Of a stretch of 64,000 bases of DNA, positions 23,047 through 62,330 are shown piece after piece. The stretch lies in IMG/VR virus record IMGVR_UViG_3300023184_000024, positions 186,001 through 250,000 of that record. The stretch is one strand, 5' to 3'. The number at the start of each line of letters is the position of its first letter. Position 1 is the stretch's first letter. The notes beneath the pieces are model-generated. The model worked only from the letters and a program-made list of their open reading frames with translations, made no database searches and was not told where the DNA came from. Made by a program: the position numbers and the translations under genes.

Positions 23047-24810
23047 ATGATCAAAATTAAAAATATAACTGTTAAAAACTTTTTATCTGTGGGCAATGCA
23101 ACACAGGCTGTAAATTTTGATCGTAACGATCTAACATTGGTGCTTGGAGAAAATCTAGATCTTGGCGGAGACGGTAGTCGCAATGGTACTGGCAAAACCA
23201 CGTTGATTAATGCACTTAGCTACGCATTGTACGGCAATGCCATCAGCAATATTCGCAAAGACAATCTTATAAACCGAACCAATGGTAAATCCATGTTGGT
23301 TAGTTTAGAGTTTAGTGTGCAAGGAAAAGAGTACAAAGTCGAACGTGGGCGTAAACCCAATGTTCTTAAATTCTATATCAACAACGAAGAACAATCGTCT
23401 GAGGACAATGCACAAGGCGACAGCAGAGAAACACAGGATGCAATTGAACGTGTTCTCGGTATGAGTCACGACATGTTCAAACATGTACTAGCGTTGAACA
23501 CTTACACTGAACCGTTTTTAAGTTTAAAATCCAATGATCAACGTGCAATAATTGAACAGTTGTTAGGTATTACTCAGCTCAGTGAACGAGCAGATCGTAT
23601 CAAAGAGTTGAATCGAGTAACCAAGGACGCTATCTCTCAAGAAGAAATGCGCATACGAGCACAGCAAGAAGCTAATAAGCGAATTGAAGAACAGATAGAA
23701 GCTATAAAACGCAGACAAACATTGTGGAAAACCAAAAATGCCAATGACATTGCTGACCTAACCACCGCACTAATTTCGTTGCAAAATATAGACATTGACG
23801 TCGAGGTGCAAGCACACCGAGACCACAAGATATGGGAACAAAAACGCAAAGAGATCAACGAGTTGGCATCTGCAATTAGTCGTGCCAAACTTGATCTAGG
23901 ACGTGAAGAAAAAAACATTGCTAAGATAGTCAAAGATATTTCTGCATTAAAAAACCACACTTGCCATGCTTGTGGTCAAGACTTGCACGATTCAAAGCAT
24001 GAGGAAGTGTTAGCCGGCAAACAACAAGACTTGGAATCTGCAACAACCAGTGAACTTGCATTCTCTACTGAATTAGCTGTGTTGGAATCTACACACAAAG
24101 AGTTGGGAGTTCTAGGAAAACCTCCTAAAATGTTCTATGACAAAGAAGAAGATGCTATTCAGCATCGAGCTACTTTAGAAAATTTACAAAAACAAATTGC
24201 AGACAAATCCAATGATGTAGATCCTTACGGTGAACAAATTGACGAAATGCAAAATCAAGCACTAGTTGTGGTCACGTATGATGTGTTAAACGAGTTAACC
24301 AGACTACAAGACCATCAGGATTTCTTACTCAAGCTGTTGACCAACAAAGACAGTTTTATCCGCAAAAAAATTATTGAGCAAAATCTCAGCTACCTTAATA
24401 ATAGATTAACACATTATCTTGATCGCATCGGACTACCACATCAAGTTGTTTTCCAAACTGACTTAACTGTTGAAATTACAGAGCTGGGTCGAGATTTAGA
24501 TTTCGACAACCTGAGCAGAGGCGAGCGCAATAGATTGATCCTGTCGATGTCGTGGGCATTCAGAGACGTTTGGGAAAGCTTGTACTATCCAATTAATCTC
24601 TTGTTCATTGACGAACTAGTCGATTCTGGTATGGACACGCAGGGTGTTGAAAATAGCTTATCTTTACTAAAGAAAATGAGCAGAGAACGCCACAAGAGTA
24701 TCTGGTTAGTAAGCCACAGAGATGAACTAGCAGGACGAGTAGAGAATATACTTCGTGTAATTAAAGAGAACGGATTTACTACATACAATACAGATGTGGA
24801 TGTATTATAA
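23047..24810 (+). CDS. gp46: Recombination ATPase subunit, gp46/SbcC/Rad50-like
   Basis: Walker A NGTGKTT, coiled coil with CHACG zinc hook, signature LSRGE, Walker B LLFIDE, VSH. Confidence 0.92.
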   Translation: MIKIKNITVKNFLSVGNATQAVNFDRNDLTLVLGENLDLGGDGSRNGTGKTTLINALSYALYGNAISNIRKDNLINRTNGKSMLVSLEFSVQGKEYKVERGRKPNVLKFYINNEEQSSEDNAQGDSRETQDAIERVLGMSHDMFKHVLALNTYTEPFLSLKSNDQRAIIEQLLGITQLSERADRIKELNRVTKDAISQEEMRIRAQQEANKRIEEQIEAIKRRQTLWKTKNANDIADLTTALISLQNIDIDVEVQAHRDHKIWEQKRKEINELASAISRAKLDLGREEKNIAKIVKDISALKNHTCHACGQDLHDSKHEEVLAGKQQDLESATTSELAFSTELAVLESTHKELGVLGKPPKMFYDKEEDAIQHRATLENLQKQIADKSNDVDPYGEQIDEMQNQALVVVTYDVLNELTRLQDHQDFLLKLLTNKDSFIRKKIIEQNLSYLNNRLTHYLDRIGLPHQVVFQTDLTVEITELGRDLDFDNLSRGERNRLILSMSWAFRDVWESLYYPINLLFIDELVDSGMDTQGVENSLSLLKKMSRERHKSIWLVSHRDELAGRVENILRVIKENGFTTYNTDVDVL

Positions 24811-25437: not shown

Positions 25438-25955
25438 ACATTCTTATAACTGGTACAAAAGGATTGGCTGAAGCATTGGGAAGATTATTGTCACAAGACA
25501 ACCACGTTACTTGTGTCAGCAAATCCAATGGATACAACATTGCTGATATCATGACATGGGGACCAAAATTTTATCACTACGATGTTTGTATTAACTGTTG
25601 TTATGATACGTGGCATCAAGTTGGTGTGTTGGAACAATTTTATTATGCATGGCGCAATGATTCATCAAAGCAAATTATAAACATTGGTTCAATTATCAGT
25701 GACTATACTCGCACAGACGTGACTACTGAGCACGAATATCTAGCATATCGTGTTCATAAACAGGCATTACAAACTGCATTTAACAAACTTAGTAGATCAG
25801 CCAAATGCGATATTAAACTAATCAATCCAGGTGCAATTGACACTGATATGATAAAGCACATGGACTGTGTTAAAATGTCTCCGGAGTGGTTGGCTACCCA
25901 AATTAAAAATGTTATGTCGCAAACATGGTTAAAGAGAGTTGACTTATGGCAATAA
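25434..25955 (+). CDS. Short-chain dehydrogenase/reductase
   Basis: ILITGTKGLA Rossmann start, IINIGS, YRVHK (YxxxK), INPGAIDTDM. Confidence 0.8.
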   Translation: MNILITGTKGLAEALGRLLSQDNHVTCVSKSNGYNIADIMTWGPKFYHYDVCINCCYDTWHQVGVLEQFYYAWRNDSSKQIINIGSIISDYTRTDVTTEHEYLAYRVHKQALQTAFNKLSRSAKCDIKLINPGAIDTDMIKHMDCVKMSPEWLATQIKNVMSQTWLKRVDLWQ

Positions 25956-27049
25956 ATTGGCAATACTATCATTGGCACTTGGAACTCAGCGCAGTTTGTG
26001 CTCTTCAATGTCCTCGCTGTCCAAGAACAGAACATCCAGATACTCCTTGGTTAAATTACAGCATGAGTTTGGATTTTTTTAAATCCTTTATGACTCCTGA
26101 CATGTTAAAAAACAAAGTAAAAAGATTGACCATGTGCGGAGATGTAGGTGATCCAATTTACTGCAAAGATTTCCTTGACATATACAAATATATCAAAGAA
26201 GTCAATCCTAAAATACATGTGTATACTATTACCAACGGCAGCAATCGAAAAGCCGAGTGGTGGCAGGCATTTGCACAAGTTGCCAACGAGTATGACACAA
26301 TAAATTTCAGCATCGATGGGTACGATCAACTCAGCAATGCAATGTATCGTGTTGGCAGTAACTGGCAATCTATCATGACTGGTATTAGCACTCTTAGAAA
26401 ATACAATACAAAAATTCTAATCAACTGGGCAATGATTGTTTTTAAGTTCAATCAAAACCATATTGGTAAAATACAAGCATTGGCTAGTGACCTAGGAATG
26501 GATGCTTTGCAAATTACAAAAAGCACCAAGTTTGGCAGCAAGTACGGAGAAGCATATCTTGGCGTTAATGATTATCTTGAGCCAGACAGCAAATGGATTT
26601 CACCAAGTCATCGTTACGAACGTTCGATGATTAACATCAGTGGTCGACAACCACTTAATCAAGAGTTTATAATACAAAACAAGCAACAATACATTGCTAT
26701 CAAGCAAGAGTATCATAACAAACCAATCACTCCGCTGTGCGAAATTGGCAATAGAGGACTGTATGTCAATGCCGAAGGTGTATTATTTCCATGCAGTTGG
26801 ACTAGTTTTCCTTATAAAAGTTTGAGTAATGGTGTAAAAACCATAGAATGGAAGGATAGCTTTTTTGCTATGTACAGAGAGCAAATGAACTTACGTACAC
26901 GATCGTTGGACGAAATACTCAACGATCCACTATGGGACAAGTGCAGCCAAGGTTGGCATGACGAGTCTAAGACTTGGGTAGAATGCCAGCAAAAATGTAA
27001 TACCAGTATTGTTGATGTAAATTATGCAGTGGGTTGGGAAACCAATTAA
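25946..27049 (+). CDS. Radical SAM protein with SPASM/twitch-like C-terminus
   Basis: CALQCPRC, TNG, FSIDG, and C-terminal C...G..FPC...CQQKC. Confidence 0.85.
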   Translation: MAINWQYYHWHLELSAVCALQCPRCPRTEHPDTPWLNYSMSLDFFKSFMTPDMLKNKVKRLTMCGDVGDPIYCKDFLDIYKYIKEVNPKIHVYTITNGSNRKAEWWQAFAQVANEYDTINFSIDGYDQLSNAMYRVGSNWQSIMTGISTLRKYNTKILINWAMIVFKFNQNHIGKIQALASDLGMDALQITKSTKFGSKYGEAYLGVNDYLEPDSKWISPSHRYERSMINISGRQPLNQEFIIQNKQQYIAIKQEYHNKPITPLCEIGNRGLYVNAEGVLFPCSWTSFPYKSLSNGVKTIEWKDSFFAMYREQMNLRTRSLDEILNDPLWDKCSQGWHDESKTWVECQQKCNTSIVDVNYAVGWETN

Positions 27050-27465
27050 TGAAATTCTACCTGGGCCTAGAACATCCAACACTTAACAGAGTACGGTTAC
27101 TTGTTGATCAACGAGAAATCACAGACTGCGAAGTAGTATCTCAATGGGAATCAACTGTTGATGTTACTAGAACAACCAGCATTGAAGTTTGGTTTTGGCC
27201 TTGGGGTATTAAACCATTGTTAAGAGTTAATGGGCACTTAGTAGATTTTAGTTTGGCAAAAGTAGATCAATTTGATCATATGTTAAAGTTCAACTTGACC
27301 AAAGACTTTTTTAATCTATACGGCCAAGAGTTAGTGACCAGTAGAATTGAGTCACAGTTCAAGAATGGTGTTGTTGACAAAGACGTTTACGATTCAGTCA
27401 TTGGATTTGGACAGCACCACTATGATTTGGTTGAAAAAATAAAACGACGATTAGTTAATGGATAA
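27049..27465 (+). CDS. Hypothetical protein
   Basis: Start placed at ATG 27049 (TAATG overlap with upstream stop); no recognisable motif. Confidence 0.55.
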   Translation: MKFYLGLEHPTLNRVRLLVDQREITDCEVVSQWESTVDVTRTTSIEVWFWPWGIKPLLRVNGHLVDFSLAKVDQFDHMLKFNLTKDFFNLYGQELVTSRIESQFKNGVVDKDVYDSVIGFGQHHYDLVEKIKRRLVNG

Positions 27466-28951
27466 CAAAAAGTTTGCGTTTGTAACTGTACCTGTGCTAG
27501 AGCTATGGAATCCATCGGCTGCATTGGCTGCGCTTACTCCAATGATAAAACGCCACGGACTTGAGCCACAACTGATTGACATAAACCTAGAGCTCAACGA
27601 AATGTTGTCCGAGGCTGATTGGGATCAATTCAACGATTGGGCAAGTATGGTCACTGATCAAATTGACGATCAGTTGATCATCCGTGTGCTAGACATAGTA
27701 GATCAACACTTGTCTACTATAGAGTGCGGTTGGTTGGCTTTCAGTGTATTTTCATTTTACAGCGTTAGGCCAACGGCACTAATATTATCCCATCTAGGAA
27801 AAAACAGCAGTCGACAACATAAAATATTGTTAGGCGGCAGCGGTACAATGAGTAGCATGGCAGAATTTGGTCAAAAACCTTTTGGCCAGTGGTGTTTAGA
27901 AAACAATCTTGCAGACTACTGTATATTTGGCGAAGGTGAACAGGCCTTAGATAATCTTCTCAGCGGCAATGACCAATATCCCGGAATCAACAATACCAAT
28001 TTTACACAGATCACCAATCTTGATACATTGCCGTTGCCTGAATATTCAAGTTTTGATTTTTCTAGGTACAAAGACAGTCGAGTGTTATTAACTGGTAGTC
28101 GTGGATGTGTTAGACATTGCACATTCTGTGACATTGACTTGACTTGGCCAAAATACACTTACCGCAGTCCACACTTGATTGTTGAAGAGATGCGGCGACA
28201 TGTGCACGAATTGGGAGTAAGTAAATTTGAATTCACTGACAGTCTCATCAATGGATCAGTGTCAAACTGGAACAAATTCAACGAGTTGCTAATTGAGGCC
28301 AAGGCCAAGGACCCAGCAATGAAAGATGTCAGTTACATGGGTCAGTTTATTTGCAGGAATCGCACTAGTATGCATTCAAGCACCTATGAACTCATGCACT
28401 ACGCTGGATGTAAACAAATACATGTGGGCATCGAACACTTCAGTGAACGAGTTCGTTATCACATGAAGAAAAAATTCAGTGACGCAGACATTGACTATCA
28501 CTTGGAAATGAGCAGTCGTTGGCACATTCCAAATATTTTTTTGATGATTGTAGGTTATCCAACTGAAACCTTGCAGGATCATCAACAACAATTAAAAGCA
28601 ATAGAAAAATATCAAATTTATGCACAAACTGGCGCTATCTTTATGCTACGATGGGGTCTTACCATGCATATCTACGAAAACACTCCGTTGACAAAAATGT
28701 CAAACGAACTACAGTTGTCGTTTACAGACAATGCATTTCATGACAGCGTTTTCAACTGGGTCGCTGGTGTTAACCCGACTCTGGACTTGGCGGAACGTAT
28801 CCGTCGCAGAGTTGAACTACACGAGCTCAGTGCAAAATTAGGGTATTCAATGCCCAACACCAGAAAAGAACTAGCAAGTTTATTACAGCTCACAGAACAA
28901 ATGCACCTTATTAAACCACCACCAAAAACTATTCAAATAATACCAGCTTAA
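27458..28951 (+). CDS. B12-binding-domain radical SAM protein
   Basis: N-terminal cobalamin-binding-like region (KILLGG...GEGE), SRGCVRHCTFC, GIEHFSE, VGYPTET. Confidence 0.85.
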   Translation: MDNKKFAFVTVPVLELWNPSAALAALTPMIKRHGLEPQLIDINLELNEMLSEADWDQFNDWASMVTDQIDDQLIIRVLDIVDQHLSTIECGWLAFSVFSFYSVRPTALILSHLGKNSSRQHKILLGGSGTMSSMAEFGQKPFGQWCLENNLADYCIFGEGEQALDNLLSGNDQYPGINNTNFTQITNLDTLPLPEYSSFDFSRYKDSRVLLTGSRGCVRHCTFCDIDLTWPKYTYRSPHLIVEEMRRHVHELGVSKFEFTDSLINGSVSNWNKFNELLIEAKAKDPAMKDVSYMGQFICRNRTSMHSSTYELMHYAGCKQIHVGIEHFSERVRYHMKKKFSDADIDYHLEMSSRWHIPNIFLMIVGYPTETLQDHQQQLKAIEKYQIYAQTGAIFMLRWGLTMHIYENTPLTKMSNELQLSFTDNAFHDSVFNWVAGVNPTLDLAERIRRRVELHELSAKLGYSMPNTRKELASLLQLTEQMHLIKPPPKTIQIIPA

Positions 28952-29010: not shown

Positions 29011-29445
29011 ATGACATGGCTTTATCAAAACACCCCAGTTGAGACATTGCCCGAAGATTGTATAGGATTTGTTTATCTAATCACAAATACAACCAGCTCA
29101 CGCAAATACATAGGCAAAAAACTAGCAAAATTCTCCAAGACTACACAACGAACAGTTAAACTCAAGAATGGTACCAAGAAGAAAAAAAAGATTCGCAATA
29201 AAGTTGATTCAGATTGGCGAGACTATTATGGGTCTAGTCCTGAACTTAGCAAGGATGTGGAACTTTTTGGCAAAGATAATTTTATCAGAGAAATACTTTA
29301 TTATTGTAAATCAAAATCAGAATGTAGCTATATTGAGGCAAGAGAACAATTTTCAAGGCGTGTATTAGAATCATCAGATTATTACAACGGGCATATTCAA
29401 GTCCGTGTTCATGGTTCTCATATCAAAGACAAACTAAGCAATTAA
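29011..29445 (+). CDS. Stand-alone GIY-YIG nuclease
   Basis: GFVYLITNTTSSRKYIGKK, YYGSS, conserved E (YIEARE) and YYN; 144 aa with no C-terminal DNA-binding domain; Lys-rich insert. Confidence 0.8.
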   Translation: MTWLYQNTPVETLPEDCIGFVYLITNTTSSRKYIGKKLAKFSKTTQRTVKLKNGTKKKKKIRNKVDSDWRDYYGSSPELSKDVELFGKDNFIREILYYCKSKSECSYIEAREQFSRRVLESSDYYNGHIQVRVHGSHIKDKLSN

Positions 29446-29922
29446 GCAGTTACAGCTTGCACAGGCTAATATCATGTGCCCTAGACCTGGATCTCGGATC
29501 GCAGGGATGGAAGTCTTGCCGCTGCCGCAAGCACTCAGCAACTATCCTTGACAGGACGATGATCGCAAATTGCCGCGGTTTTGCTGTTTGAAAAGAATTT
29601 AAAGGCTAAAAAGACGCAGGAGTGATCCTGCAGGTTTGTGCAATGTGTTAGCGTATGTTGTGCAAATTGCCGTTGTAAAAGACGGAACGAGCAGGTACCG
29701 GACAACCGCCTGTGCAAGAGTTTATAGTGGATTATAGTCAACTATAAACAATTATAGTTCTAACGCTAAGTGACTGTGCTACTCAGATAATGACAGTTTC
29801 TTTGCCCTGTGTGGGCAAAGTGTGACCAATTAATCTAGATAATAACTTAAATCTCACTTTGTTCGATGACTATAATAGCATTGATGAACGAAGTGAAATC
29901 AATAGACTTACGAAGTAAGTCT
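29446..29922 (+). ncRNA. Candidate large structured non-coding RNA
   Basis: Longest non-coding stretch in the window. Perfect 11-bp long-range stem 29456-66/29708-18; outer stem 29446-53/29770-77; at least 9 further helices; GUGA tetraloop; G-U pairs favour the + strand. Confidence 0.7.
29904..29922. terminator. Perfect hairpin AGACTTAC-GAA-GTAAGTCT between convergent transcription units
   Basis: 8-bp stem, GAA loop, abuts the stop of the convergent minus-strand gene; no strong U-tract. Confidence 0.4.
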
Positions 29923-30254
29923 TAGAACTGGTCTGGCCAATCTCTAAACAATGCGTGTTGAATATTGCCACTGACAAATTGATTAAAGCTTTTGTGTTTG
30001 TCTTCGAGTTCACCTTCAAGTGGTGCTACTCTTCGAAAAGCTGAATCCATTTGACCCATGTCTCGAAACTCCATGAGTATCATCCATTCTGGCATGTCAG
30101 CAATGCTACGAAATCCCATCTTGCATCTAGTAATGCGATAGCTTACCATTTTATCTTCTGACACTAAATGATCAAAAAAACTCTTCATGCCGTTGACCCA
30201 GTCAATGTCTGAGATGTCACCTTCTTTGTCTGCCCAAATTGTATATAAATCCAT
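29922..30254 (-). CDS. Hypothetical protein, DUF6614-like
   Basis: MDLYTIW...YRITRCKMGF...PEWMILMEFRDMGQMDSAF; family recalled from pattern, not searched. Confidence 0.45.
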   Translation of the reverse strand: MDLYTIWADKEGDISDIDWVNGMKSFFDHLVSEDKMVSYRITRCKMGFRSIADMPEWMILMEFRDMGQMDSAFRRVAPLEGELEDKHKSFNQFVSGNIQHALFRDWPDQF

Positions 30255-31406: not shown

Positions 31407-32249
31407 CTAAGAGTTGGATTCGAAAAAATTTGTCATATCCAATGTAAATGGTTGTTCAAATTTGGTCTGACATGCAGTGCAACTAATGTTAAGTGGCACA
31501 AGTTCAGTGGATTTTTTCAAATCAACTGCATGATCCCTGACTTGATTAAACACTGCTCTTGTGCAGTTGTTCAACCATTCTTCTATGTGTGCAGTTTCTG
31601 TGACCATTGCATCTGGAGTGCGAATAGACGATATACTTTCTGCAATGCTTCTCACTGTTAGTTTGGCAATGTTGGCAAAGGCAGAGCCTAGTCGCGTCAT
31701 CTTTTCTTCTTCGCTCAATTCTGCATTTTGTAACAACTGCACAAGCTTTTGATCTTCAAACTGCACTTGCCCTAGTTCATTGACTTCTTTGTAGTTCATG
31801 GGCTCAAAATATATTTCAAGTCCAGATGTTTTTAAACAAGCTGAATAGTCAATGGGGCGAATATTTTCCAACACAGTACGTAAATCCAAGCCGTATTCTT
31901 GAGCATTGTCGCATTTAGGACACCTGGTGTCAATTTCCATGGTGTGCCCATAAGTGGCAATCCTGATGGCCACTAACAATGTGTCAAGGTCCACAGATGG
32001 GGTTGCCCACCCGTCTTTGATATTGGGCACACAGCTTTCGATAATTTTTACTGTGGCTGATCCATTGAACAGCGCATCGGGTGTTCTACTAGTGACTTCG
32101 TCAATGGCAGTCATTGGGTATATAGGTAATTCGTTGTTGGGCGGCATGTTAATGGTGCCGGGCGCCCAGAATTTGCCCTGTGACGGCAAGCGAATGTAAA
32201 TCACCGGCTGTCTAAAAAATTGTTTTAATGGATTGGTGTTTTCTTGCAT
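31407..32249 (-). CDS. gp26: Baseplate hub assembly protein, T4 gp26-like
   Basis: LPSQG, PMTAIDE, DLDTLLVAIRIATYG, two CxxC pairs, terminal NFF; start placed at ATG 32249. Confidence 0.75.
   Translation of the reverse strand: MQENTNPLKQFFRQPVIYIRLPSQGKFWAPGTINMPPNNELPIYPMTAIDEVTSRTPDALFNGSATVKIIESCVPNIKDGWATPSVDLDTLLVAIRIATYGHTMEIDTRCPKCDNAQEYGLDLRTVLENIRPIDYSACLKTSGLEIYFEPMNYKEVNELGQVQFEDQKLVQLLQNAELSEEEKMTRLGSAFANIAKLTVRSIAESISSIRTPDAMVTETAHIEEWLNNCTRAVFNQVRDHAVDLKKSTELVPLNISCTACQTKFEQPFTLDMTNFFESNS
31422..31428 (-). other. Slippery heptamer T_TTT_TTC (programmed -1 frameshift candidate)
   Basis: In-frame X_XXY_YYZ four codons before the stop; -1 frame is open into the downstream ORF. 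Confidence 0.65.
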
Positions 32250-32257
32250 TTTTAGGC

Positions 32258-32277
32258 TATAAATATACAAATACTTA
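32258..32277. promoter_or_regulatory. Face-to-face late promoters: TATAAATA (+, 32258-65) and TAAGTA (-, 32272-77)
   Basis: Exact T4 late consensus on +; variant on -; both inside the 40-nt gap between divergent genes. Confidence 0.6.
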
Positions 32278-37378: not shown

Positions 37379-37386
37379 ATATCATT

Positions 37387-37605
37387 ATGATTCTTAATGA
37401 ACTTTATTCAAAACCCCCGAGTGCATACCAAGATATTGCGCAAGACAATAGTCAGCCTCGGTTAGGTGATCTAAGAAAAACAAAATTAACTTTGCGTCAA
37501 ATTAACAAGCTTCGTCGCCTCAACGATGTTAGAGCATTTGAGTTTAAAGAAAAACTTAAAAAAGTTAAAAATCAATACGCGGCACCAGTTCAACCGTTGG
37601 CTTAA
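37387..37605 (+). CDS. Small basic head-region protein
   Basis: 72 aa, own TAAATA motif at 37376-81, between portal and scaffold genes. Confidence 0.6.
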   Translation: MILNELYSKPPSAYQDIAQDNSQPRLGDLRKTKLTLRQINKLRRLNDVRAFEFKEKLKKVKNQYAAPVQPLA

Positions 37606-37720
37606 AGTTACAAAAATTGTAATTTTTACTCAATTATTACAAAAATACACGGGTAAACAGCATAGTTTACTCAGGTCTATGTAAATATTCAACAGAGCCA
37701 TTTCTTGGAGGATATTTTAC

Positions 37721-42211: not shown

Positions 42212-42308
42212 TAAATATCTATAACACAATTTGGTGTTTTATGCTGATGATTAAACCCAACAGCGTAGCGGGTAGAACCCGCATCGGACTTCTATTAGGA
42301 GAAATCAA
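42212..42308 (+). promoter_or_regulatory. Late promoter plus structured 5' leader
   Basis: TAAATA 42212-17; hairpins 42223-38, 42240-67, 42268-82; weak stem 42290-303 over the AGGAGA SD. Confidence 0.5.
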
Positions 42309-42827
42309 ATGGGTCGCCCACTAAAAATTAAAAAATCCACTACCAAAGACATCGGTTTTAACAATCTTGGCAGTTTAACAAATCCAGTGTATCCAGCAAC
42401 ACTAAACACAGCTCAGTACCTGGGTGTGGTTGGTGGTGAAAATACCAGCGTAGCCACCGCATCTTATCCTGTGGTACGTTGCCAAGCATGTGAAATTGGT
42501 GGTACTGAAGAAGCAGCCATCATTGTGCGTCAAAAAGGAACCACCACATATTTGGTATTAGGCCAAACCAGCGGAAACACATATCAAGCCACGCTGGCCA
42601 ATGAAGCCACAGGTGCATTGTCACCGGGCAACATGAACATTGCCATGTTCAATGGCGACAGCACTGACATCTTGATCAGTAAACTTACTAATAAGTGGGC
42701 ATTGGATTATTCTACACCACCAGTTCGTTATGTGATCAACTTCTTCAGCGACGAAGGCACTGAGATCAAGTCTGGCACCAAAGGTGTAACAAACGATCTA
42801 GCCATTGCAGAAAATTACACTAGCTAA
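42309..42827 (+). CDS. Probable virion structural protein (head decoration-like)
   Basis: 172 aa, strong SD, late promoter, near the capsid gene. Confidence 0.55.
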   Translation: MGRPLKIKKSTTKDIGFNNLGSLTNPVYPATLNTAQYLGVVGGENTSVATASYPVVRCQACEIGGTEEAAIIVRQKGTTTYLVLGQTSGNTYQATLANEATGALSPGNMNIAMFNGDSTDILISKLTNKWALDYSTPPVRYVINFFSDEGTEIKSGTKGVTNDLAIAENYTS

Positions 42828-48875: not shown

Positions 48876-48934
48876 AAACGTTTTTTTACCTTTACGGTAA
48901 ATAGATGTTAGAAGCCTTAACGTTGGAGAATATA

Positions 48935-51900
48935 ATGGCCGTAACACGAATTAAAAATAATCAGATCACCGATACCACAATTAATGCGGCAGCCAAACTT
49001 GCCGACTATACAGTTACTGGTGGTAAGCTAGCAAATAACATAACCTATGGTTCAGACTGGACCATATCGGGAAATTTAACCGTTAACGGTACAACCAGCA
49101 CAATTGATACCATTGACTTGATCGTTGAAGATCCGTTGATGTTGTTGGCAAAAAATCAAACAGGAACTCCTGCACTTGATATTGGTTATATTGGTAAACG
49201 TGGATCAGCTACAAACATCGCATTCGTCTGGGATGAAAGTTCACAGAGATTTGTAACTGTTTTCACAGACAGTGAAAATACTAACACAGTTATTACTATT
49301 AATAGCTACGCCAGTTTTCAAACTTTAAATCTCACAGCACAAGACGGCAATTTTTCAGGAAATATCACAGTAACCGGCACCAGCGGCTTCACAGGAAATA
49401 CCACCATTGGTAATATGAGTGTGTCGGGTAATAATAAAACAATTGACATGGGACTCAACATTGTAGGCAATGTTCTTGACCCAGTAGGTGCGCAAGACGC
49501 TGCCACAAAAAGCTATGTTGACGGCATTGTCAGCGGCGGTATTACCATTGAAGATGACACTGCCAACACAACAGCACTGGCACTTGACGGAACTCTGGTA
49601 TTAAATGGCACAGCAAATGAAGTGACAGTGACTATCAGTGCTGTTGATACAGTGACATTTGGATTGCCAGACAGTATCAGCATTTCAGGTAACGTAAGTG
49701 CTGGTAACATAAGTGCTACAAACACAATATCTGCCGGTGACATAACTTCTGGCAATATTATTCCTACTGCCAACGTAACATATAATTTAGGTAGCCCAAC
49801 AGCTCAATGGAAGAGCTTGTACATCAGTGGCAACACAATTTACATGAGAGATGTTCAGCTACAACAACCTTCTGCCAGTGCCAATACGTTACAAGTTACC
49901 ACTGCTGATGGTACAACGTTGGGTGATTTTAAAACAGGCGGACTAACAGCCACAGGAAATGCCAATGTGGGCAATTTGGGCACTGCTGGCGTAGTGACTG
50001 CAACTGGCAACGTAACGGGTGGCAATGTTGGTACAGGCGGTACTGTGACTGCAACTGGCAACGTAACGGGTGGCAATGTTGGTACAGGCGGTACTGTGAC
50101 TGCAACTGGCAACGTAACGGGCGGCAACGTCGGCACAGGCGGTACTGTGACCGCAACTGGTAATGTAACAGGTGGCAACGTAGGTACTGCTGGATCAGTG
50201 ACAGCCACAGGCAATGTTAGCGGTGGTAATATGAGCACAGGTGGTACTGTGACCGCAACTGGCAATGTAGCTGGCGGCAATTTGACCACAGCTGGAGCAA
50301 CAAGTACAGCTACATTGACAGCTACAGGAAATGCCAATGTGGGCAATTTGGGCACAGGCGGTACGGTAACAGCAACTGGCAATGTAACCGGCGGTAATAT
50401 GAGCACAGGTGGCACTGTGACAGCAACTGGCAACGTAAGCGGTGGCAATGTGACCACAGTTGGTGCTGTAACTGCAACAGGTACAGTGACTGGTGGCAAT
50501 GTAAGCACAGGCGGTACTGTAACAGCAACTGGTAATGTAAGCGGTGGCAATGTGACCACAGGTGGTGCTGTAACTGCAACTGGCACAGTAACTGGTGGCA
50601 ATTTGACCACAGCAGGATTGACCAGTACTGCCACATTATCAGCCAGTGGCAATGCCACCGTGGGCAATTTGGGTACGGGCGGTACTGTGACAGCAACTGG
50701 TAATGTAAGCGGTGGCAATATAACAACTGGCGGAGCAGTAGATGCAACTGGCACAGTAACTGGTGGCAACTTGACCACAGCAGGATTGACCAGTACTGCC
50801 ACATTATCAGCCAGTGGCAATGCTAACGTGGGTAATTTGGGCACTGCTGGTACGGTGACTGCTACAGGTAACGTTGCAGGTGGCAACATCAGCACAGGTG
50901 GCACTGTGACTGCTACAGGTAATGTTGCAGGCGGCAACGTAACCACAGGTGGTACTGTGACTGCTACCGGTACAGTGACTGGTGGTAATGTAAGCACAGG
51001 TGGTACTGTGACTGCTACAGGTAATGTAAGCGGTGGTAATTTGGCCACAGGCGGCCAGGTAACAGCAACTGGCAACATTAACGGCGGCAATGTTAATACT
51101 TCTAGTGTTAACAACACAGGCGCATTAACTATAACCACAACAACTGGTAACCTTAATTTAGAACCAACTGGCAACATCGTATTAAACAACAAGTACATTA
51201 ATGGCGTAAATCAGCCAGTGCAAGACAACGATGCGGCCAGCAAGATCTATGTTGACAACATGGTGTCAACTCAAATAGCATACCACCAAGCAGTGACAGC
51301 GGCCACAACAGGCACACTGGCTACAGCCACAGGTGGTACAGTTACATATAATAATGGAACTGCTGGTGTTAATGCTACACTGACCACAACTGGTGCATTT
51401 AATTTAATCGACACAGCCAACGTTCAAACAGTTGGCACCCGTATTCTAGTTAAAAACGAAGCCAATGCTGCCTGGAACGGGGTATACACATACGCTAATA
51501 CAACAGCCATTGTTCGTTCCACAGACACCGACGAATACGGTCCAAACAGTTCTGAAGAATTGAGTATCAATGATTACTTCTTTGTCACCGGTGGTAGCAC
51601 CAACGCTGGTAGCGCATGGATTTGTGACGCACCGACTGGTGTAATCACTTTTGGTACCAGCAACATTCAGTTCGCTCAGTTTAGTAGCAGCCAAACATAC
51701 AGTGCTGGCAATGGCGTCAGCATCAACGGAACAGTGCTTTCTGCCAAAGTTGACGAAATTACCACATCATTTGATGGACTAGGCAATATCATTGTCAAAG
51801 CATCAGCACAATTAACAACACCAAACATTGGTGCGGCAACCGGTACATCGCTGACAGTAACAAGCGGGGTCACAGCAAATACTATAAGTGCTAATTTAAC

Positions 51901-54900
51901 AGTAAGTGCCACAGGCAATGTAAGCGGTGGCAATTTGACCACTGGTGGTGCAGTAGATGCTACTGGCACCGTAACTGGTGGCAATTTAAGCACAGGTGGT
52001 ACTGTAACTGCCACAGGTAATGTAAGCGGTGGCAATGTAACCACAGGCGGCGTAGTAACAGCAACTGGTACAGTAACCGGCGGCAACTTAAGCACAGGTG
52101 GCACAGTAACTGCCACAGGTAATGTAAGTGGTGGCAATTTGACCACAGGTGGTACTGTAACTGCCACAGGTAATGTAAGTGGTGGAAATGTGACCACAGG
52201 CGGCGTGGTAACTGCAACTGGTAATGTAAGCGGTGGCAACTTGACCACAGCAGGATTGACCAGTACTGCCACATTGACAGCCAGTGGCAATGCCAATGTG
52301 GGTAATTTGGGCACTGCTGGATCAGTGACAGCAACTGGCAATGTGGCTGGCGGCAATGTGACCACAGTTGGAGCAGTAGATGCAACTGGCACAGTAACTG
52401 GTGGCAATTTGGCCACAGGTGGTACTGTAACTGCCACAGGTAACGTAAGCGGTGGCAACATCAGCACTGCTGGATCAGTGACTGCAACTGGCAATGTTGC
52501 TGGTGGAAATGTAACCACAGGTGGTACTGTGACTGCAACTGGCAATGTTGCTGGTGGAAATGTGACCACAGGTGGTACTGTGACTGCAACTGGCAACGTA
52601 AGTGGCGGCAACTTGACCACAGCTGGAACAACAAGTACTGCCACATTATCAGCCAGTGGCAATGCCAATGTGGGTAATTTAGGCACTGCTGGATCAGTGA
52701 CTGCAACTGGCAATGTAGCCGGTGGCAATATAACAACTGGCGGTGTAGTAACTGCAACTGGCACAGTAACTGGCGGCAACATCAGCACAGGTGGTACTGT
52801 AACTGCCACAGGTAACGTAAGTGGTGGCAACATCAGCACAGCCGGACAAACAAGTACTGCCACATTATCAGCCAGTGGCAATGCCAATGTGGGTAATTTA
52901 GGCACTGCTGGATCAGTGACTGCAACTGGCAATGTAGCCGGTGGCAATATAACAACTGGCGGAGCAGTAGATGCAACTGGCACAGTAACTGGTGGCAATT
53001 TGGCCACAGGTGGTACTGTAACTGCTACAGGCAACGTAAGCGGTGGCAATTTAACCACAGGTGGTGTAGTAACTGCAACCGGCACAGTAACTGGCGGCAA
53101 CATCAGCACAGGTGGTACTGTGACAGCCACAGGCAATGTAAGTGGTGGCAACGTAACCACAGGTGGTGTAGTATCTGCCACAGGCAACGTAAGCGGTGGC
53201 AATTTAACCACAGCTGGTGCAGTAGTAACGCCAACAGTTACCAGCACATCAGGGTTGTCTATCACATCTGGATCAAATGGAAACATTACTCTTGATCCAA
53301 ACGGTACTGGCGTAATTGTTCTATCTGACCAAACAGCAAATCGCATGTTGTTTACTGGCGTAAATCAAGAAATCAAAACAGATGGCAATGCAACATTTGA
53401 CGGCGCCAATTTGGTTATCAGCGGTTCAGTAACAGTTGACAATGTTCTCATCAATGGCAACGACATTAAAGGCATTGGTAATGTATTGACCATCAATGAT
53501 GGTGCCCCAAATGATATTGTATTCACAATTTTTGGCGCAAATAATTCAAATGCACTTATAGTGGATTCATCTACTACCACAGTATTAGTTCACACTGGAA
53601 CACCCACCACAGGTGCAGCATTCAAGATTGGAACTTCGGACTCAATGATGGTACCAGTTGGTAATTCTATACAGCGTCCAGCTACTGGTGTAACTGGTAT
53701 GGTGCGTTTCAACACCAGCCTTAACAACTTGGAATTCTATGACAACAATTCATGGGAATCAGCTGGTAGTCAGTTCACTGTTATCACAGCCAACACACAA
53801 ACTGGAACTGGTAGTCAAACAGCATTCACATTGCCAGCTAACAGTACCACTGCTGGTACAATTGTTGCAATCAACGGTGTGGTACAATTGCCAACATCGG
53901 CTTACAGTATTGCGGCCGATGTTTGTACATTCACTGAAGCGCCTACTGCCACTGATGTGATTGATTTTAGAATTTTAACTACTACATCAACAATTACTGG
54001 GATACTTGGCACAGCTGGAGCTTCAATAACAGCCAGCGACACAGCAGCCAACCTTAACGTCACTGGTAACTTGATTGTTGCTGCCGGCGGTGTATACTAC
54101 GGTGATGGTAGCGGATTGACCAACTTGAACGTGTCTGGAAACACAATTAGTTTTGGTAATTCCAAAGTTGATGTGGCCACCAACGGTGGTAATGTCAACA
54201 CAGTAATTTCTGGTACTACAGTACAAACTATTAGCCCAGGACTTGTCAACATCATTGGAGACTTGACTGTCAGTGGTAATGCTACACTAAGCGGTAACAT
54301 TTTGGGTGACAGAATACAAAATGGTACAACCACCATTGATATTCAAACACCTAACGGCAATGCTGACATCACAGTCGGTGGTGTAGGTGTTGCTGCGTTT
54401 GGCACAGGTGGATTAGCACTAACTGGTAACCTTGTACCAACTGCCAATGTTACATATGACTTGGGTAGTTCTATATCAGCTTGGAGAGACTTGTATTTGT
54501 CAGGCACAAGTATTAAACTTGGTGCTCAAACAATCTCATCAAATGCCACATCAGTGAGTTTTGGCTCTGCAACTGTTGCTACTACAGGCAACATTGTGGC
54601 TGCAAATATGACTGGTAACATCACATTCCCAGCAGGCAGTATAATTAACACAACTGGTAATGTAACTGGTGGTAACATTAACACAGGTGCTCAAGTAGTA
54701 GCAACTGGCAATATCACAGGTGGTAACATTACCACAGCTGGCAAACTAAGTGTAACCGGCAACGCTAACGTGGGTAACCTGGGCACATCAGGAAACATCA
54801 CTGCTTCATACTTCTTAGGTAACGGTAGTCAGCTAACAGGCATTGACGCCACAGCCATACAAAATGGCACAGCCAACGTTAGAACATTTAACAACGCTAA

Positions 54901-57900
54901 CGTAACAGTTAGCGCCGCAGGTACAGCCAACGTACTAGTTGTAACTGGTACAGGCGCTAACATTGCTGGCACATTGAATGCCACAGGCAATGCCAACGTG
55001 GGCAACATTGGTGCAACTAATGTAGTTGCTACTAACGTAGCAGGTACATTGACCACAGCCGCACAAACCAACATTACGTCAGTGGGCACATTGACAAGTT
55101 TGGCTGTAACTGGCAACGTCACAAGTGGCAATGTAAGTGGTACAGCAGGTACGTTCACCAATGTCACTGGTACATTACAGACGGCAGCACAAACCAACAT
55201 TACGTCAGTGGGCACATTGACAAGTTTGGCTGTAACCGGCAACGTCACAAGTGGCAACGTAAGTGGCACAGCAGGTACATTCACCAATGTCACTGGTACA
55301 TTACAGACCGCGGCACAAACAAACATCACTAGTGTTGGTACATTGAGTGCATTAACTGTAACTGGTAATGTAACTGGTGGTAACATTAACACAGGTGCTC
55401 AAGTAGTAGCAACTGGCAATATTACAGGTGGTAATTTGACCACAGCTGGTAATGTTTCTGGTGCTTACATCTTGGGTAACATTAGTCTAGCAACTGGTTA
55501 TAACTCAAGCAGAATCTACAACGGTACAAGTGAAGTTAACGTTGCTGCCAACGCCAATACTACAATCAAAGTAGGCGGTGATGTGGCAGCAACATTTAGC
55601 GGCTCATTGCTCGACTTGACTACTTCGCCTAATTATGCTGTTACTGCAACAGGTAATATTCGTGGTGCCAACTTAACCACAGCTGGCACAGTAACAGCCG
55701 CAACAGTTAACGCAGCCGCAATTGGTAACTCAGGTGCAACTTTAACTGGTACACTACAAACTGCGGCACAGACCAACATCACGTCAGTGGGCACATTGGG
55801 CAGTTTAAGTGTTACTGGCAACATCACAGGTGGCAACATCTTGGGTGGTGCCAATGTCAATGCCACAACTCACACAGGTACCACAGTCAATGTTACAGGT
55901 AACATTACTGGTGGTAATCTATCAGTAACCAACATTGTAGGAACGTTAACTACTGCCGCACAAACCAACATCACTTCGGTGGGTACATTAAGTAGTTTAG
56001 CAGTATCTGGTACAGGTTCATTTGGTGGTAACGTTAACTTAAATAGCTTCAATATTACTAGTCTGGCTACTCCAGTTAACTCAACTGATGCCGCAACAAA
56101 ACAATATGTTGATGATGTTTCACAAGGTTTGAACATACACGACGCTTGCGGTGCAGCCACAAACACAACGTTAGCAACAATATCAGGTGGTACGGTTACA
56201 TATAATAACGGTACAGCAGGTGTTGGAGCAACATTGACGACAACAGGAACATTTACAACTATTGACGGTGTTACATTGTCAAATGGTATGCGTATTCTTG
56301 TTAAGAACGAAGCAACTGCCGCAAATAATGGTATATATACTCGCACAAGTGCAACAGTATTGACCCGTGCCGCAGATTATAACACAGTTCCTGAAGTAGA
56401 AGCAGGCGACTTTACATTCGTAACTGCTGGAACATTGTATGATAACACTGGTTGGGTGCAAACATCTACTGTGGCAACTATTGGTACTGATGCCATTGAC
56501 TTCGCACAATTCTCTGGTGCTGGTACATACACAGCTGGTACAGGATTAACATTAACTGGTTCACAGTTTAGTATTAGTAACACTGCTGTCAGTGCTGCCA
56601 GCTATGGTAGTTCTACAGCAATCCCAACCTTCACTGTCAACCAACAAGGTCAGCTAACTGCCGCAAGTACCGCCGCAGTTGTTGCTCCAGCTGGTACATT
56701 GAGTGGTGCAACATTGGCTAGTGGTGTAACTGCAAGTAGCTTGACGTCGGTGGGCACATTGGGCTCGCTGAGTGTAACTGGTAACATCACTTCGGGTAAC
56801 ATCAGTGGTACAAATCACACTGGTACTAATGCCACATTAACTGGCACAGTAACAGCCGCAACAGTTAACGCAGCCGCAATTGGTAACTCAGGTGCAACTT
56901 TAACTGGTACACTACAAACTGCGGCACAGACCAACATCACGTCAGTGGGCACATTGACAAGTTTGGCTGTAACTGGTAATATCACAAGTGGCAACGTAAG
57001 TGGCACAGCAGGTACATTCACCAATGTCACTGGTACACTACAAACAGCAAGTCAAACCAATGTTACCGCAGTGGGCACATTGACAAGTTTGGCAGTATCT
57101 GGTAACGCAAGTTCGGCAACAGCGGCAGCAGATACAAACACAACACAGTTGGCAACAACAGCATTTGTAATTGGACAAGCCAGCGCAACAACTCCAACCA
57201 GCATTGGTACCAACACAACTGGCACAAGTTTGCGTTATGCTCGCGCAGACCACACGCACACTGGTGTTGCTAGTTTGGCCAATGGCGGCGGCATTACTGC
57301 TAGTGTGTCGAGTGGTGCAGTTACTCTAGGATCAACTGCTACCAACGCAAACACAGCAAGCGCAATTGTTGCACGTGATGCAAGTGGTAACTTTAGTGCA
57401 GGCACAATTACTGCTACTTTGAGTGGATCAGCAACAAGTGCTGGGACAGCAACTACTGCTGGCACAGTGACAACTGCGGCACAAGGTAACATTACAAGTG
57501 TTGGTACACTAACTGGATTGACATTAAGTGGAACATTAACTGGTACAACAGTCAACGCAGCCGCAATTGGTAATGCAGGTGCAACACTAACTGGCACACT
57601 ACAAACTGCCGCACAGACTAACATTACAAGTGTTGGTACACTAACTGGATTGACTGTATCAAGTACTATCAATGGTTCAATAACTGGATCGGCAGCTAGT
57701 GCTACCACAGCAGGTACAGTGACAACTGCGGCACAAGGTAACATTACAAGTGTTGGTACATTGACTGGATTGACTGTGTCAAGTACTATCAATGGTTCAA
57801 TTACTGGATCGGCAGCTAGTGCTACCACAGCAGGTACTGTGACCACAGCGGCACAAGGTAACATTACCAGCGTTGGTACACTGACTGCTCTAACAGTTAG

Positions 57901-62253: not shown

Positions 62254-62273
62254 AGCATATATTTATGGACGGA

Positions 62274-62302: not shown

Positions 62303-62330
62303 TAGGGCTTAACTACACAAAGGAGCCACC

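What the first reader, a model, noticed from the sequence alone, without database searches (positions are those of the whole stretch)
29011..29922. Minimal GIY-YIG nuclease followed directly by a ~475-nt highly structured RNA: candidate nuclease-RNA system
Seen: in an otherwise tightly packed genome, the only long non-coding stretch begins at the base after the nuclease stop. It folds into a nested multi-branch structure: outer stem GCAGTTAC/GTGACTGT (29446-53/29770-77); perfect 11-bp stem CTTGCACAGGC/GCCTGTGCAAG (29456-66/29708-18) closing ~240 nt; internal helices at 29486-505, 29515-31, 29536-41/29581-86 (enclosing 29545-56), 29616-31 (GUGA GNRA loop), 29634-67 (14 bp, 6 G-U) and 29670-85; then 3' hairpins at 29720-49, 29800-20, 29854-96 and 29904-22. 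The G-U pairs would be A-C mismatches on the other strand, which points to a + strand RNA co-transcribed with the nuclease. The 144-aa protein is only a catalytic domain with a very basic insert (KTTQRTVKLKNGTKKKKKIRNK). Established: GIY-YIG homing endonucleases (I-TevI, Seg) normally carry a separate DNA-binding domain, and IscB/TnpB nucleases use an adjacent structured RNA. Inference: protein and RNA may form a ribonucleoprotein, possibly RNA-guided, or acting in late DNA processing or packaging (a late-like TAACTA lies at 28977-82). I could not match the RNA by eye to RNase P, tmRNA, SRP, 6S or group I/II introns.
Basis: partly seen in the sequence, partly recalled or inferred. Interest (0 to 1): 0.88.

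Follow-up and report, generated by a model that had tools for sequence, protein, structure and literature searches.

The report
Phage nuclease gene with large partner RNA
A big, intricately folded non-coding RNA always sits right after a small nuclease gene in a large group of T4-like freshwater phages; a third of it was catalogued in 2010 as an orphan motif, but its full size, its partner gene and an odd pair of co-evolving short motifs had not been described.

Summary
29011-29445 encodes a stand-alone SegE-type GIY-YIG nuclease domain. 29446-29922 is a real plus-strand structured RNA, supported by a fold z-score of -5.3 and dozens of compensatory base-pair changes. Its 5' third (29454-29589) is the known orphan Rfam family Polynucleobacter-1 (118.9 bits), which Weinberg 2010 already noted lies downstream of this gene family. 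New here:
- The RNA is about 430-475 nt long with four pseudoknots.
- A second variant has a different 5' domain but the same 3' core.
- The gene-RNA pair is a fixed, syntenic core module (52 of 52 loci anchored on the baseplate hub), not a sporadic homing element.
- In about 5% of loci an unrelated PD-(D/E)XK nuclease replaces the GIY-YIG gene and the RNA is kept.
- Two 7-nt motifs flanking a GC hairpin vary among phages (12 haplotypes) but are identical to each other in 178 of 181 RNAs.

No guide-like hypervariable end exists, and cultured homologues lack the RNA. My best guess is that the RNA is a co-transcribed partner (specificity or regulation) of the adjacent nuclease. The mechanism is unproven.

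The parts
29011..29445 (+). Stand-alone SegE-type GIY-YIG nuclease domain gene (144 aa), with a long Lys-rich beta-hairpin insert at residues ~40-66
   Evidence: Pfam PF19835, E 3.6e-33, residues 3-129. PHROG 447. AF2 model pLDDT 81.7 with strands 40-50/56-66. Best meaningful fold match is the I-TevI catalytic domain 1ln0, prob 0.80. Y22, Y33, R93, E109 and N126 are invariant even against distant homologues.
29446..29922 (+). Full-length structured non-coding RNA (about 477 nt here, 430-475 nt in relatives)
   Evidence: z = -5.29. 49 of 86 RNAalifold pairs have compensatory changes. An nhmmer profile finds it over its whole length in more than 100 loci.
29446..29449 (+). 5' leader GCAG, first bases after the stop codon. 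Pairs with the P3 loop CUGC 29522-29525 (pseudoknot pk2).
   Evidence: At least 8 compensated variants, e.g. ACGG/CCGU, GUAG/CUAC, GCCAA/UUGGC, GCGA/UCGC.
29454..29589 (+). 5' domain = Rfam RF01718 Polynucleobacter-1 RNA (P1-P5, plus pk1 29454-56/29465-67)
   Evidence: cmscan 118.9 bits against gathering score 37, model positions 1-141. Helix counts.
29572..29606 (+). pk3: P5 loop GCC 29572-74 pairs with GGC 29604-06, tying the Rfam domain to downstream sequence
   Evidence: GC:41 / CG:40 at 29572-29606.
29616..29631 (+). P6 hairpin
   Evidence: Compensatory changes in 5 of the 7 pairs counted for P6 (29615-29632).
29634..29667 (+). P7 long hairpin. Its loop 29648-54 forms pk4 with 29763-69.
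   Evidence: P7: 13 of 14 pairs covary. pk4: 7 of 7 pairs have double-sided changes and 95% are canonical.
29685..29760 (+). P8 (29685-88/29757-60) enclosing P9 and the invariant 17-mer GGUACCGGACAACCGCC (29694-29710). Also contains a window-specific insertion hairpin 29720-29749.
   Evidence: P8: 4 of 4 pairs covary. P9: 100% canonical. The 17-mer retrieves the family from sequence collections. The insertion is seen only in the window and L056.
29781..29794 (+). Motif m1: A-CUC-[AGAUAAU]-GA
   Evidence: The 7-nt core is identical to that of m2 in 178 of 181 distinct RNAs, with 12 haplotypes.
29800..29820 (+). GC-rich hairpin between m1 and m2
   Evidence: 90% canonical in type A. Type B carries a fully compensated different sequence.
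29833..29846 (+). Motif m2: A-UCU-[AGAUAAU]-AA
   Evidence: The fixed differences from m1 are all transitions.
29854..29896 (+). Long 3' hairpin with a variable loop
   Evidence: 77% canonical with some compensatory changes.
29904..29922 (+). Terminal hairpin: the likely 3' end of the RNA. Read on the minus strand it is terminator-like for the convergent gene.
   Evidence: 8 of 8 pairs covary. Terminator scan.
23047..24810 (+). Context: gp46/SbcC-like recombination nuclease subunit. In many relatives it is the gene directly upstream of the nuclease-RNA pair.
   Evidence: PHROG 77, E 4e-100. L015 and L470 gene order.
31407..32270 (-). Context: baseplate hub gene of the convergent late block, used as a synteny anchor
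   Evidence: PHROG 150. 52 of 52 hub loci hold the module.

Best explanation
What it is (high confidence): a two-part module that is fixed in a deep lineage of T4-like freshwater phages. It consists of a small stand-alone nuclease gene (here a SegE-type GIY-YIG domain) followed on the same strand by a gene for a 430-475-nt RNA with four pseudoknots. The RNA starts at the first base after the stop codon. Its 5' domain is the orphan Rfam motif Polynucleobacter-1. The module lies at the end of the gp47/gp46 recombination-gene block, convergent with the baseplate genes.

How it most likely works (inferred, low confidence): the RNA is transcribed with the nuclease mRNA and acts as the nuclease's dedicated partner. 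It would bind the enzyme, in the GIY-YIG version through the elongated Lys-rich beta-hairpin. It would then either direct the enzyme or restrain it. The two matched 7-nt motifs (m1, m2) that flank the GC hairpin would be the element that base-pairs with one common external nucleic acid.

The nuclease itself is more likely a core DNA-processing enzyme (host-DNA breakdown or branch resolution alongside gp46/47) than a homing endonuclease.

Shown: gene identity, RNA reality and architecture, linkage, synteny, nuclease replacement, and the motif identity rule. Inferred: co-transcription, physical binding, and the role of m1/m2.
For: - RNA reality and extent.
- Rfam 5' domain.
- Linkage from the RNA side: 97 adjacent, 8 with an inserted ORF, 9 at contig ends, 1 with only 559 nt upstream, of 115. 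Metagenome contigs: 52 adjacent and 12 with an insert of 75. Type-B scan: 82 adjacent and 17 with an insert of 118.
- Linkage from the synteny side: 52 of 52 hub-anchored loci hold both, while hub identity is only 48-57% and the nuclease 65-92%.
- The flanks on both sides are fluid. The commonest upstream-neighbour family covers only 38 of 122 loci. The gene-RNA junction is interrupted in only about 10-15% of loci.
- When the GIY-YIG gene is absent, an unrelated PD-(D/E)XK nuclease (PF24608, E 1e-22 to 1e-26) sits in exactly its place, and the RNA again starts right after its stop codon.
- The RNA-linked GIY-YIG clade has a basic beta-hairpin 6-11 residues longer than six RNA-less cultured homologues.
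- The m1/m2 cores are identical in 178 of 181 RNAs across 12 haplotypes. All fixed or sporadic differences in positions -4 to +7 are transitions, as expected for wobble-tolerant pairing to one partner.
Against: - Homologous nucleases in cyanophages, Melnitz, C48C1, ACP17 and phiN3 work without any such RNA.
- One RNA scaffold serving two unrelated nuclease folds is hard to reconcile with a specific protein-RNA interface.
- ORFs can be inserted between the gene and the RNA.
- Three GIY-YIG loci have no RNA within 3 kb.
- No complementary partner for m1/m2 was found in the RNA, in the flanking 5-10 kb, or in the 64-kb window.
- Protein columns do not track the m1/m2 haplotype.
- There is no transcript or binding data.
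Confidence: 0.4

Rival explanations
1. Autonomous trans-acting non-coding RNA, for example a decoy, sponge or scaffold for a host or phage factor, possibly self-assembling like other ornate phage RNAs. It would simply be parked at the end of the gp47/gp46-nuclease transcription unit, with no direct interaction with the nuclease.
For: - The RNA is kept when the nuclease family is swapped.
- ORFs can separate the gene and the RNA.
- Nuclease homologues do without the RNA.
- The RNA's size and four pseudoknots resemble stand-alone large RNAs.
- Two interchangeable 5' domains share one 3' core.
Against: - The gene-RNA junction is far better preserved than either neighbouring junction in a region full of accessory-gene insertions.
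- The replacement gene is again a nuclease, not a random gene.
- The clade-specific extension of the basic hairpin coincides with RNA presence.
Confidence: 0.3
2. Cis-acting 3' untranslated element. It would control translation termination, stability or 3'-end formation of the nuclease mRNA, and insulate convergent early/middle and late transcription.
For: - The RNA begins at the base after the stop codon for both nuclease types, so a terminating ribosome would cover pk2, pk1 and P1.
- The terminal hairpin is terminator-like on the minus strand.
- No conserved promoter lies directly upstream of the RNA.
Against: - About 450 nt, four pseudoknots and near-invariant single-stranded blocks are far more than such a role needs.
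- The RNA still occurs when another ORF lies between it and the nuclease.
- The m1/m2 identity rule has no place in this model.
Confidence: 0.15
3. One reading: an RNA-guided DNA endonuclease analogous to IscB/TnpB, with the RNA replacing the missing DNA-binding domain.
For: - The nuclease lacks a DNA-binding domain.
- Linkage is tight.
- m1/m2 behave like a short (7-13 nt) programmable element.
Against: - There is no hypervariable 16-20-nt guide at either end. The 5' end is in pk2 and the 3' end is a conserved hairpin.
- There are no transposon ends and no RuvC/HNH domain.
- RNA-less homologues also lack a DNA-binding domain.
- The phage's own 7-mer haplotype is not clearly enriched or depleted in its own DNA.
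- No target-like complement was found.
Confidence: 0.1
4. Selfish mobile cassette: a free-standing homing endonuclease plus a degenerate intron-like or protective RNA.
For: - GIY-YIG Seg-type domain.
- Neighbouring genes vary.
- The nuclease is much more conserved than the hub gene.
Against: - It is present at the same syntenic spot in 52 of 52 hub-anchored loci, and no empty site was found.
- There is no split host gene and no group I/II intron hit even at E<=10.
- The closest DNA relatives are only about 70-80% identical, so there has been no recent transfer.
Confidence: 0.03

Closest known systems
Polynucleobacter-1 RNA motif (Rfam RF01718; Weinberg et al. 2010, PMC2864571)
   Same: Window 29454-29589 matches the whole 141-position model at 118.9 bits. 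The family comes from freshwater/estuary samples. It lies downstream of the gene family GOS11034/PSSM2_218, which I show is this GIY-YIG family (37% identity, E 3e-20).
   Different: The published motif is only the 5' third. The leader pseudoknot (pk2), pk3, P6-P9, pk4, the m1/m2 unit and the 3' hairpins lie outside it. The gene was not recognised as a nuclease. The motif had not been found in any phage, whereas here it sits in T4-like phage contigs of up to 346 kb. A sister RNA type lacks the Polynucleobacter-1 domain altogether.
HEARO / omega-RNA with IscB, and TnpB reRNA (OMEGA systems)
   Same: A conserved large structured RNA is genetically locked to a small nuclease gene. HEARO was also first an orphan motif from the same 2010 survey.
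   Different: The nuclease families differ (GIY-YIG or PD-(D/E)XK, not RuvC/HNH). The RNA lies downstream of the ORF. There are no IS200/605 ends and no long variable guide. The module is a fixed phage core locus, not a transposon.
T4 Seg endonucleases and I-TevI (GIY-YIG homing endonucleases)
   Same: Same catalytic domain type (Pfam SegE_GIY-YIG; weak structural match to the I-TevI catalytic domain).
   Different: There is no C-terminal DNA-binding domain. The gene is not sporadic: it is syntenic and near-universal in the lineage, and its family is present in hundreds of cyanophage records.
T4 endonuclease II (DenA), a ~136-aa GIY-YIG enzyme that starts host DNA breakdown (recalled from memory, not tested)
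   Same: Similar size. It is a stand-alone GIY-YIG domain with a basic middle region and a core phage function. Cyanomyoviruses are said to lack a recognisable denA (PMC2984593), which leaves that role open.
   Different: No sequence hit to any PDB entry, even with a profile. Foldseek did not retrieve it. No RNA partner is known for DenA.
GOLLD / ROOL large ornate RNAs of phages and prophages
   Same: Large, pseudoknotted, phage-borne RNAs of unknown function found by comparative genomics.
   Different: No Rfam match. This RNA is smaller and is tied to a specific protein gene, whereas GOLLD and ROOL form RNA-only assemblies (PMC12286853, seen).
Type III toxin-antitoxin systems (ToxIN)
   Same: A nuclease gene paired with an adjacent structured RNA that could restrain it. 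Mixing one RNA with different nucleases is reminiscent of antitoxin/toxin shuffling.
   Different: There the RNA is a tandem repeat array upstream of an endoribonuclease. Here a single complex RNA lies downstream of DNA-nuclease-type domains.

Membership tests
Rfam RF01718 Polynucleobacter-1 RNA | Covariance-model score at or above the gathering threshold over the full model | tested here: met
   118.9 bits against 37; model 1-141; E 3e-25.
Rfam RF01718 Polynucleobacter-1 RNA | Located downstream of the GOS11034 / PSSM2_218-type gene | tested here: met
   PSSM2_218 (T4-GC 213) is 37% identical to the window ORF, E 3e-20.
Rfam RF01718 Polynucleobacter-1 RNA | The family model describes the whole RNA | tested here: not met
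   Conserved, covarying structure runs from 29446 to 29922. pk2 and pk3 link the motif to sequence outside the model.
GIY-YIG nuclease superfamily, SegE type | Domain profile match with conserved catalytic Tyr/Tyr/Arg/Glu/Asn positions | tested here: met
   PF19835, E 3.6e-33. Y22, Y33, R93, E109 and N126 are invariant across distant homologues.
Homing endonuclease genes (Seg/I-TevI kind) | Separate sequence-specific DNA-binding domain | tested here: not met
   The domain covers residues 3-129 of 144, and no other Pfam hit is found.
Homing endonuclease genes (Seg/I-TevI kind) | Sporadic presence/absence among related genomes | tested here: not met
   52 of 52 hub-anchored loci carry the gene.
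OMEGA RNA-guided nucleases (IscB/TnpB) | RuvC (with or without HNH) nuclease encoded in an IS200/605-type element | tested here: not met
   The protein is GIY-YIG or PD-(D/E)XK. The locus is a syntenic phage locus.
OMEGA RNA-guided nucleases (IscB/TnpB) | Hypervariable guide of ~16-20 nt at one end of a conserved scaffold | tested here: not met
   The 5' end pairs internally. The 3' end is a conserved hairpin. The only programmable-looking element is the internal 7-13-nt m1/m2 pair.
Group I / group II introns | Match to intron models and a split host gene | tested here: not met
   No hit at E<=10. No plus-strand ORF continues across the region.
tRNA / tmRNA | ARAGORN detection | tested here: not met
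   0 genes in the window.
Type III toxin-antitoxin | Tandem array of antitoxin RNA repeats processed by an endoribonuclease toxin | tested here: not met
   Only two short motifs 47-61 nt apart inside a unique fold. RNase activity was not testable.
T4 endonuclease II (DenA) orthologues | Detectable sequence or fold similarity to the solved EndoII structure | tested here: inconclusive
   No PDB sequence hit. Foldseek found only I-TevI at prob 0.80. The comparison rests on memory.

The most novel reading that the evidence does not exclude
A new kind of RNA-dependent nuclease module in T4-like phages. One ornate RNA would carry a duplicated, freely re-programmable 7-13-nt recognition element (m1 = m2), which pairs through Watson-Crick and wobble pairs with two copies or both strands of an external target. 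It would thereby direct or gate whichever small nuclease (GIY-YIG or PD-(D/E)XK) is encoded in front of it.
Probability: 0.12. Interest if true: 0.92.

Novelty: new variant of a known kind. Interest (0 to 1): 0.66.

Why it matters
- An orphan RNA motif catalogued in 2010 turns out to be one domain of a much larger RNA that is fixed in an abundant group of freshwater phages and locked to a nuclease gene. This is the same starting situation that HEARO was in before IscB/omega-RNA was understood.
- The nuclease swap (GIY-YIG to PD-(D/E)XK with the RNA kept) and the strictly matched but variable twin motifs give concrete, cheap experiments: binding, cleavage with and without RNA, and motif reprogramming.
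- If the RNA programs or gates the nuclease, it would be a new RNA-protein principle in phage DNA metabolism and possibly a compact tool.
- If it does not, it is still a new large RNA class with an unusual identity-type covariation that needs explaining.
- The work also reassigns a widespread 'NAD synthetase'/'homing endonuclease' annotation (T4-GC 213, PHROG 447) to a core stand-alone GIY-YIG nuclease.

Tried and rejected
1. Whole RNA as a known family: only the 5' third matches Rfam. The 3' two-thirds and the type-B RNA give nothing, even at permissive E-values.
2. tRNA/tmRNA: none found.
3. Group I intron carrying a GIY-YIG ORF: no model hit and no split gene.
4. Mobile homing cassette: rejected by 52 of 52 syntenic presence.
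5. Bacterial origin: the 17-mer gave 71 hits in 596 Gb, which is about the chance number. Only two are real RNAs, both on phage-like MAG contigs.
6. Cultured phage carriers: none by blastn or nhmmer.
7. Internal complementary partner for m1/m2: none, even allowing G-U pairs and using full sequences.
8. Partner in the flanking 5-10 kb or in the window: none above chance.
9. Genome-wide enrichment of a phage's own 7-mer haplotype: only about 1.2-fold, not convincing. AGATAAT occurs 19 times in the window against 7.9 expected; this was left unexplained.
10. m1/m2 read as sense codon plus stop codon, or as a gene-60-like take-off/landing pair: the spacing to the upstream GUG varies by 1-2 nt, m1-m2 spacing is 47-61 nt, and there is no flanking ORF.
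11. Protein residues tracking the haplotype: none.
12. A dedicated promoter directly upstream of the RNA: none conserved.
13. PDB sequence and fold searches for a closer structural relative (for example EndoII): nothing significant.
14. RNAalifold's alternative long-range pairing of 29499-29509 with 29668-76: it conflicts with the covarying P2, so I did not adopt it.
15. mafft-qinsi was unavailable.
Full report
**The sequence itself**

The ORF 29011-29445 (+) encodes 144 aa. These match Pfam SegE_GIY-YIG (PF19835) from end to end (E 3.6e-33) and PHROG 447, a family misleadingly named 'NAD synthetase'. The next gene, 29922-30254, is on the minus strand (DUF6614). So 29446-29921 is a non-coding stretch between convergent genes. 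It is the longest stretch in the window without an ORF of 90 aa or more. The plus strand folds to -153.9 kcal/mol with z = -5.29 against dinucleotide shuffles. The minus strand gives z = -4.33.

**Known family**

cmscan places 29454-29589 (+) in Rfam RF01718, Polynucleobacter-1 RNA. The score is 118.9 bits against a gathering score of 37, over the full model. The remaining 330 nt match nothing, even at E<=10. The only paper in the library that names the motif is Weinberg et al. 2010. Its supplement makes three points:
- The motif has 16 representatives from fresh water or estuaries.
- It was not found in any sequenced phage.

PSSM2_218 (T4-GC 213, 'NAD synthetase') is 37% identical to the window protein (E 3e-20). 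The gene-RNA neighbourhood was therefore seen in 2010, but the gene was not recognised as a nuclease, and only a third of the RNA was described.

**Relatives**

IMG/VR holds at least 590 relatives of the protein. The best 80 are 69-89% identical.
- A profile of the non-coding region finds it over its full length directly after the gene in most of these loci.
- Starting instead from the RNA (17-mer GGTACCGGACAACCGCC), 115 viral loci carry the RNA. Of these, 97 have the GIY-YIG gene within 200 nt upstream on the same strand, 8 have one extra ORF in between, 9 are cut by a contig end, and one (L174) keeps only 559 nt upstream.
- The same 17-mer in 596 Gb of bacterial and archaeal genomes gives 71 hits, about the chance number. 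Only two are real RNAs, both on phage-like MAG contigs.
- Metagenome contigs repeat the picture: of 75 RNAs, 52 are adjacent, 12 have an insert and 6 have no room upstream.

**Structure**

RNAalifold on 26 sequences predicts 86 pairs, of which 49 have compensatory changes. I then aligned 103 non-identical RNAs and used mutual information and per-pair counts.

Supported elements:
- P1 29459-63/75-79.
- pk1 29454-56/29465-67.
- pk2: leader GCAG 29446-49 with P3 loop 29522-25, with at least 8 compensated variants.
- P2, P3, P4, P4a and P5 (the Rfam helices).
- pk3: 29572-74/29604-06.
- P6 29616-31.
- P7 29634-67 (13 of 14 pairs covary).
- pk4: P7 loop 29648-54 with 29763-69 (7 of 7 pairs).
- P8 29685-88/29757-60.
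- P9 around the invariant 17-mer 29694-29710.
- The GC hairpin 29800-20.
- The terminal hairpin 29904-22 (8 of 8 pairs).

Invariant G-U pairs fix the strand as plus.

29720-49 is an insertion found only here and in L056. The RNA is real and ornate, but its architecture is pseudoknotted rather than one nested multi-branch fold.

**A second RNA type**

Many loci align only from the middle of the profile onward. Their 5' half is a different conserved domain with no Rfam match. The 3' core is shared:
- the 17-mer with one substitution,
- UGACUG,
- the m1-hairpin-m2 unit,
- the 3' hairpins.

The hairpin between m1 and m2 is fully compensated between the two types.

**Not a homing element**

I used the baseplate hub gene (31407-32270, minus strand) as an anchor. 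In 52 of 52 loci with at least 3 kb beyond the hub, both the nuclease gene and the RNA are present and convergent with the hub. The hub proteins are only 48-57% identical to the window's, while the nucleases are 65-92% identical. Upstream lies the T4-like gp55 / gp47 / gp46 block. Accessory genes (radical SAM and others) are inserted at various points on both sides. The module is a fixed core feature of a deep lineage. The gene-RNA junction is much better preserved than the junctions next to it.

**Nuclease replacement**

Five metagenome RNAs had no GIY-YIG gene. In four of them (L365, L387, L460, L470) a 171-172-aa PD-(D/E)XK nuclease occupies exactly the same place on the same strand. It matches PF24608 (E 1e-22 to 1e-26) and PHROG 244, 'Holliday junction resolvase'. 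A type-B-like RNA starts right after its stop codon, in the same synteny: SbcC-like gene, nuclease, RNA, then the convergent small gene and hub. A scan with the type-B 17-mer gives 82 GIY-YIG adjacent, 17 with an insert and 6 PD-(D/E)XK among 118 loci.

**Protein**

Homologues occur in 496 cultured-phage records, all below 60% identity. Most are T4-like cyanophages, plus Melnitz, C48C1, ACP17 and phiN3. In the seven I inspected (Melnitz, S-SRM01, S-ShM2, C48C1, ACP17, phiN3 and P-SSM2) the next gene follows within 0-148 nt, and nhmmer found no RNA in the three it scanned (Melnitz, S-SRM01 and S-ShM2).

An AlphaFold model (pLDDT 81.7) shows the basic insert as a long beta-hairpin, residues 40-50/56-66. 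This hairpin is 6-11 residues longer in the RNA-linked clade than in the six RNA-less homologues included in the alignment. The catalytic positions are invariant. PDB searches give only a weak I-TevI catalytic-domain match. A review notes that cyanomyoviruses lack recognisable denA, ndd and denB. So a core DNA-degrading or branch-processing role for this family is plausible, but that is an inference.

**The twin motifs**

Two motifs, m1 (29781-94, A-CUC-AGAUAAU-GA) and m2 (29833-46, A-UCU-AGAUAAU-AA), lie 47-61 nt apart and flank the GC hairpin. What the data show:
- The 7-nt core has 12 haplotypes among phages.
- The core is identical in m1 and m2 of the same RNA in 178 of 181 distinct RNAs of both types. 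The three exceptions differ by one transition.
- The fixed differences between the copies (CUC against UCU, G against A) are also all transitions.

That pattern is what wobble-tolerant pairing of both copies to one common partner of about 12-13 nt would produce. No such partner exists in the RNA, in the flanking DNA or in the window. The phage's own DNA is not clearly enriched for its haplotype. Protein residues do not track it. Readings as codon-plus-stop or as a bypass-type repeat do not fit. This remains unexplained.

**Interpretation**

The identity of the parts is secure. For function, I favour a co-transcribed RNA partner of the adjacent nuclease, acting in specificity or restraint (about 0.4). 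The reasons are:
- the junction is selectively preserved;
- the only replacement for the upstream gene is another nuclease;
- the basic hairpin is extended exactly where the RNA exists;
- the RNA carries a programmable-looking element.

An autonomous RNA parked in this operon (about 0.3) and a cis-acting 3' element (about 0.15) remain serious rivals. The strict IscB-like guide model (about 0.1) and a homing cassette (about 0.03) are poorly supported.

Noticed in passing
window 42222-42311 (+): A second Rfam hit: freshwater-2 RNA (RF02980), 65.9 bits against a gathering score of 49.9. It ends in AGGAGAAAUCAAAUG, i.e. it runs into the ribosome-binding site and start codon of ORF 42309-42827, so it is probably a 5' leader element.
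   Followed up: no
L470:1933-2448 (-), L365:5122-5640 (-), L387:495-1013 (+), L460:570-1088 (-): A PD-(D/E)XK nuclease (PF24608 / PHROG 244) replaces the GIY-YIG gene in front of the RNA in about 5% of loci, in the same synteny.
   Followed up: yes
L008:3426-4199, L069:3426-4571, L030:3426-3692: Extra ORFs of 257, 381 and 88 aa start at the ATGA overlap with the nuclease stop codon. The 257-aa and 381-aa ORFs have no PHROG match; the 88-aa ORF was not searched. In L008 and L030 they sit between the nuclease gene and the RNA. In L069 no RNA was found within 3 kb.
   Followed up: partly
window 25946-28951 (+): Two radical SAM genes (one with a SPASM-like C-terminus) and a 143-aa ORF are inserted between the gp46-like gene and the nuclease gene. 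A radical SAM gene is also the commonest upstream neighbour in relatives.
   Followed up: no
window, 19 sites (e.g. 7026, 15315, 27949, 29274): The window's own m1/m2 core AGATAAT occurs 19 times on both strands, against 7.9 +/- 2.8 in dinucleotide shuffles. Pooled over 217 loci the own-haplotype excess is only about 1.2-fold.
   Followed up: partly
L137 (MAG binned as Bifidobacterium, 56.7-kb contig) and L095 (Flavobacteriales MAG, 1.7-kb contig): These are the only two real RNA copies in the bacterial genome collection. Both are probably phage contigs mis-binned into MAGs.
   Followed up: no
window 29720-29760: The window-specific insertion hairpin carries repeated UUAUAG units (GAUUAUAGU, AAUUAUAGU). 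Other RNAs (L038, L039) have unrelated insertions at the same point, so this position tolerates extra hairpins.
   Followed up: no
window 37379-37720 and 62254-62641: These are the next-longest stretches without an ORF of 90 aa or more (342 and 388 nt). I did not examine them for RNA structure.
   Followed up: no
window 48905-58405 (+): A single 3166-aa ORF, not analysed.
   Followed up: no
window 29544-29557: In P4a the neighbouring pairs swap between A.C + U-A and A-U + C.A (68 against 34-35 sequences). This is coupled non-canonical covariation.
   Followed up: no
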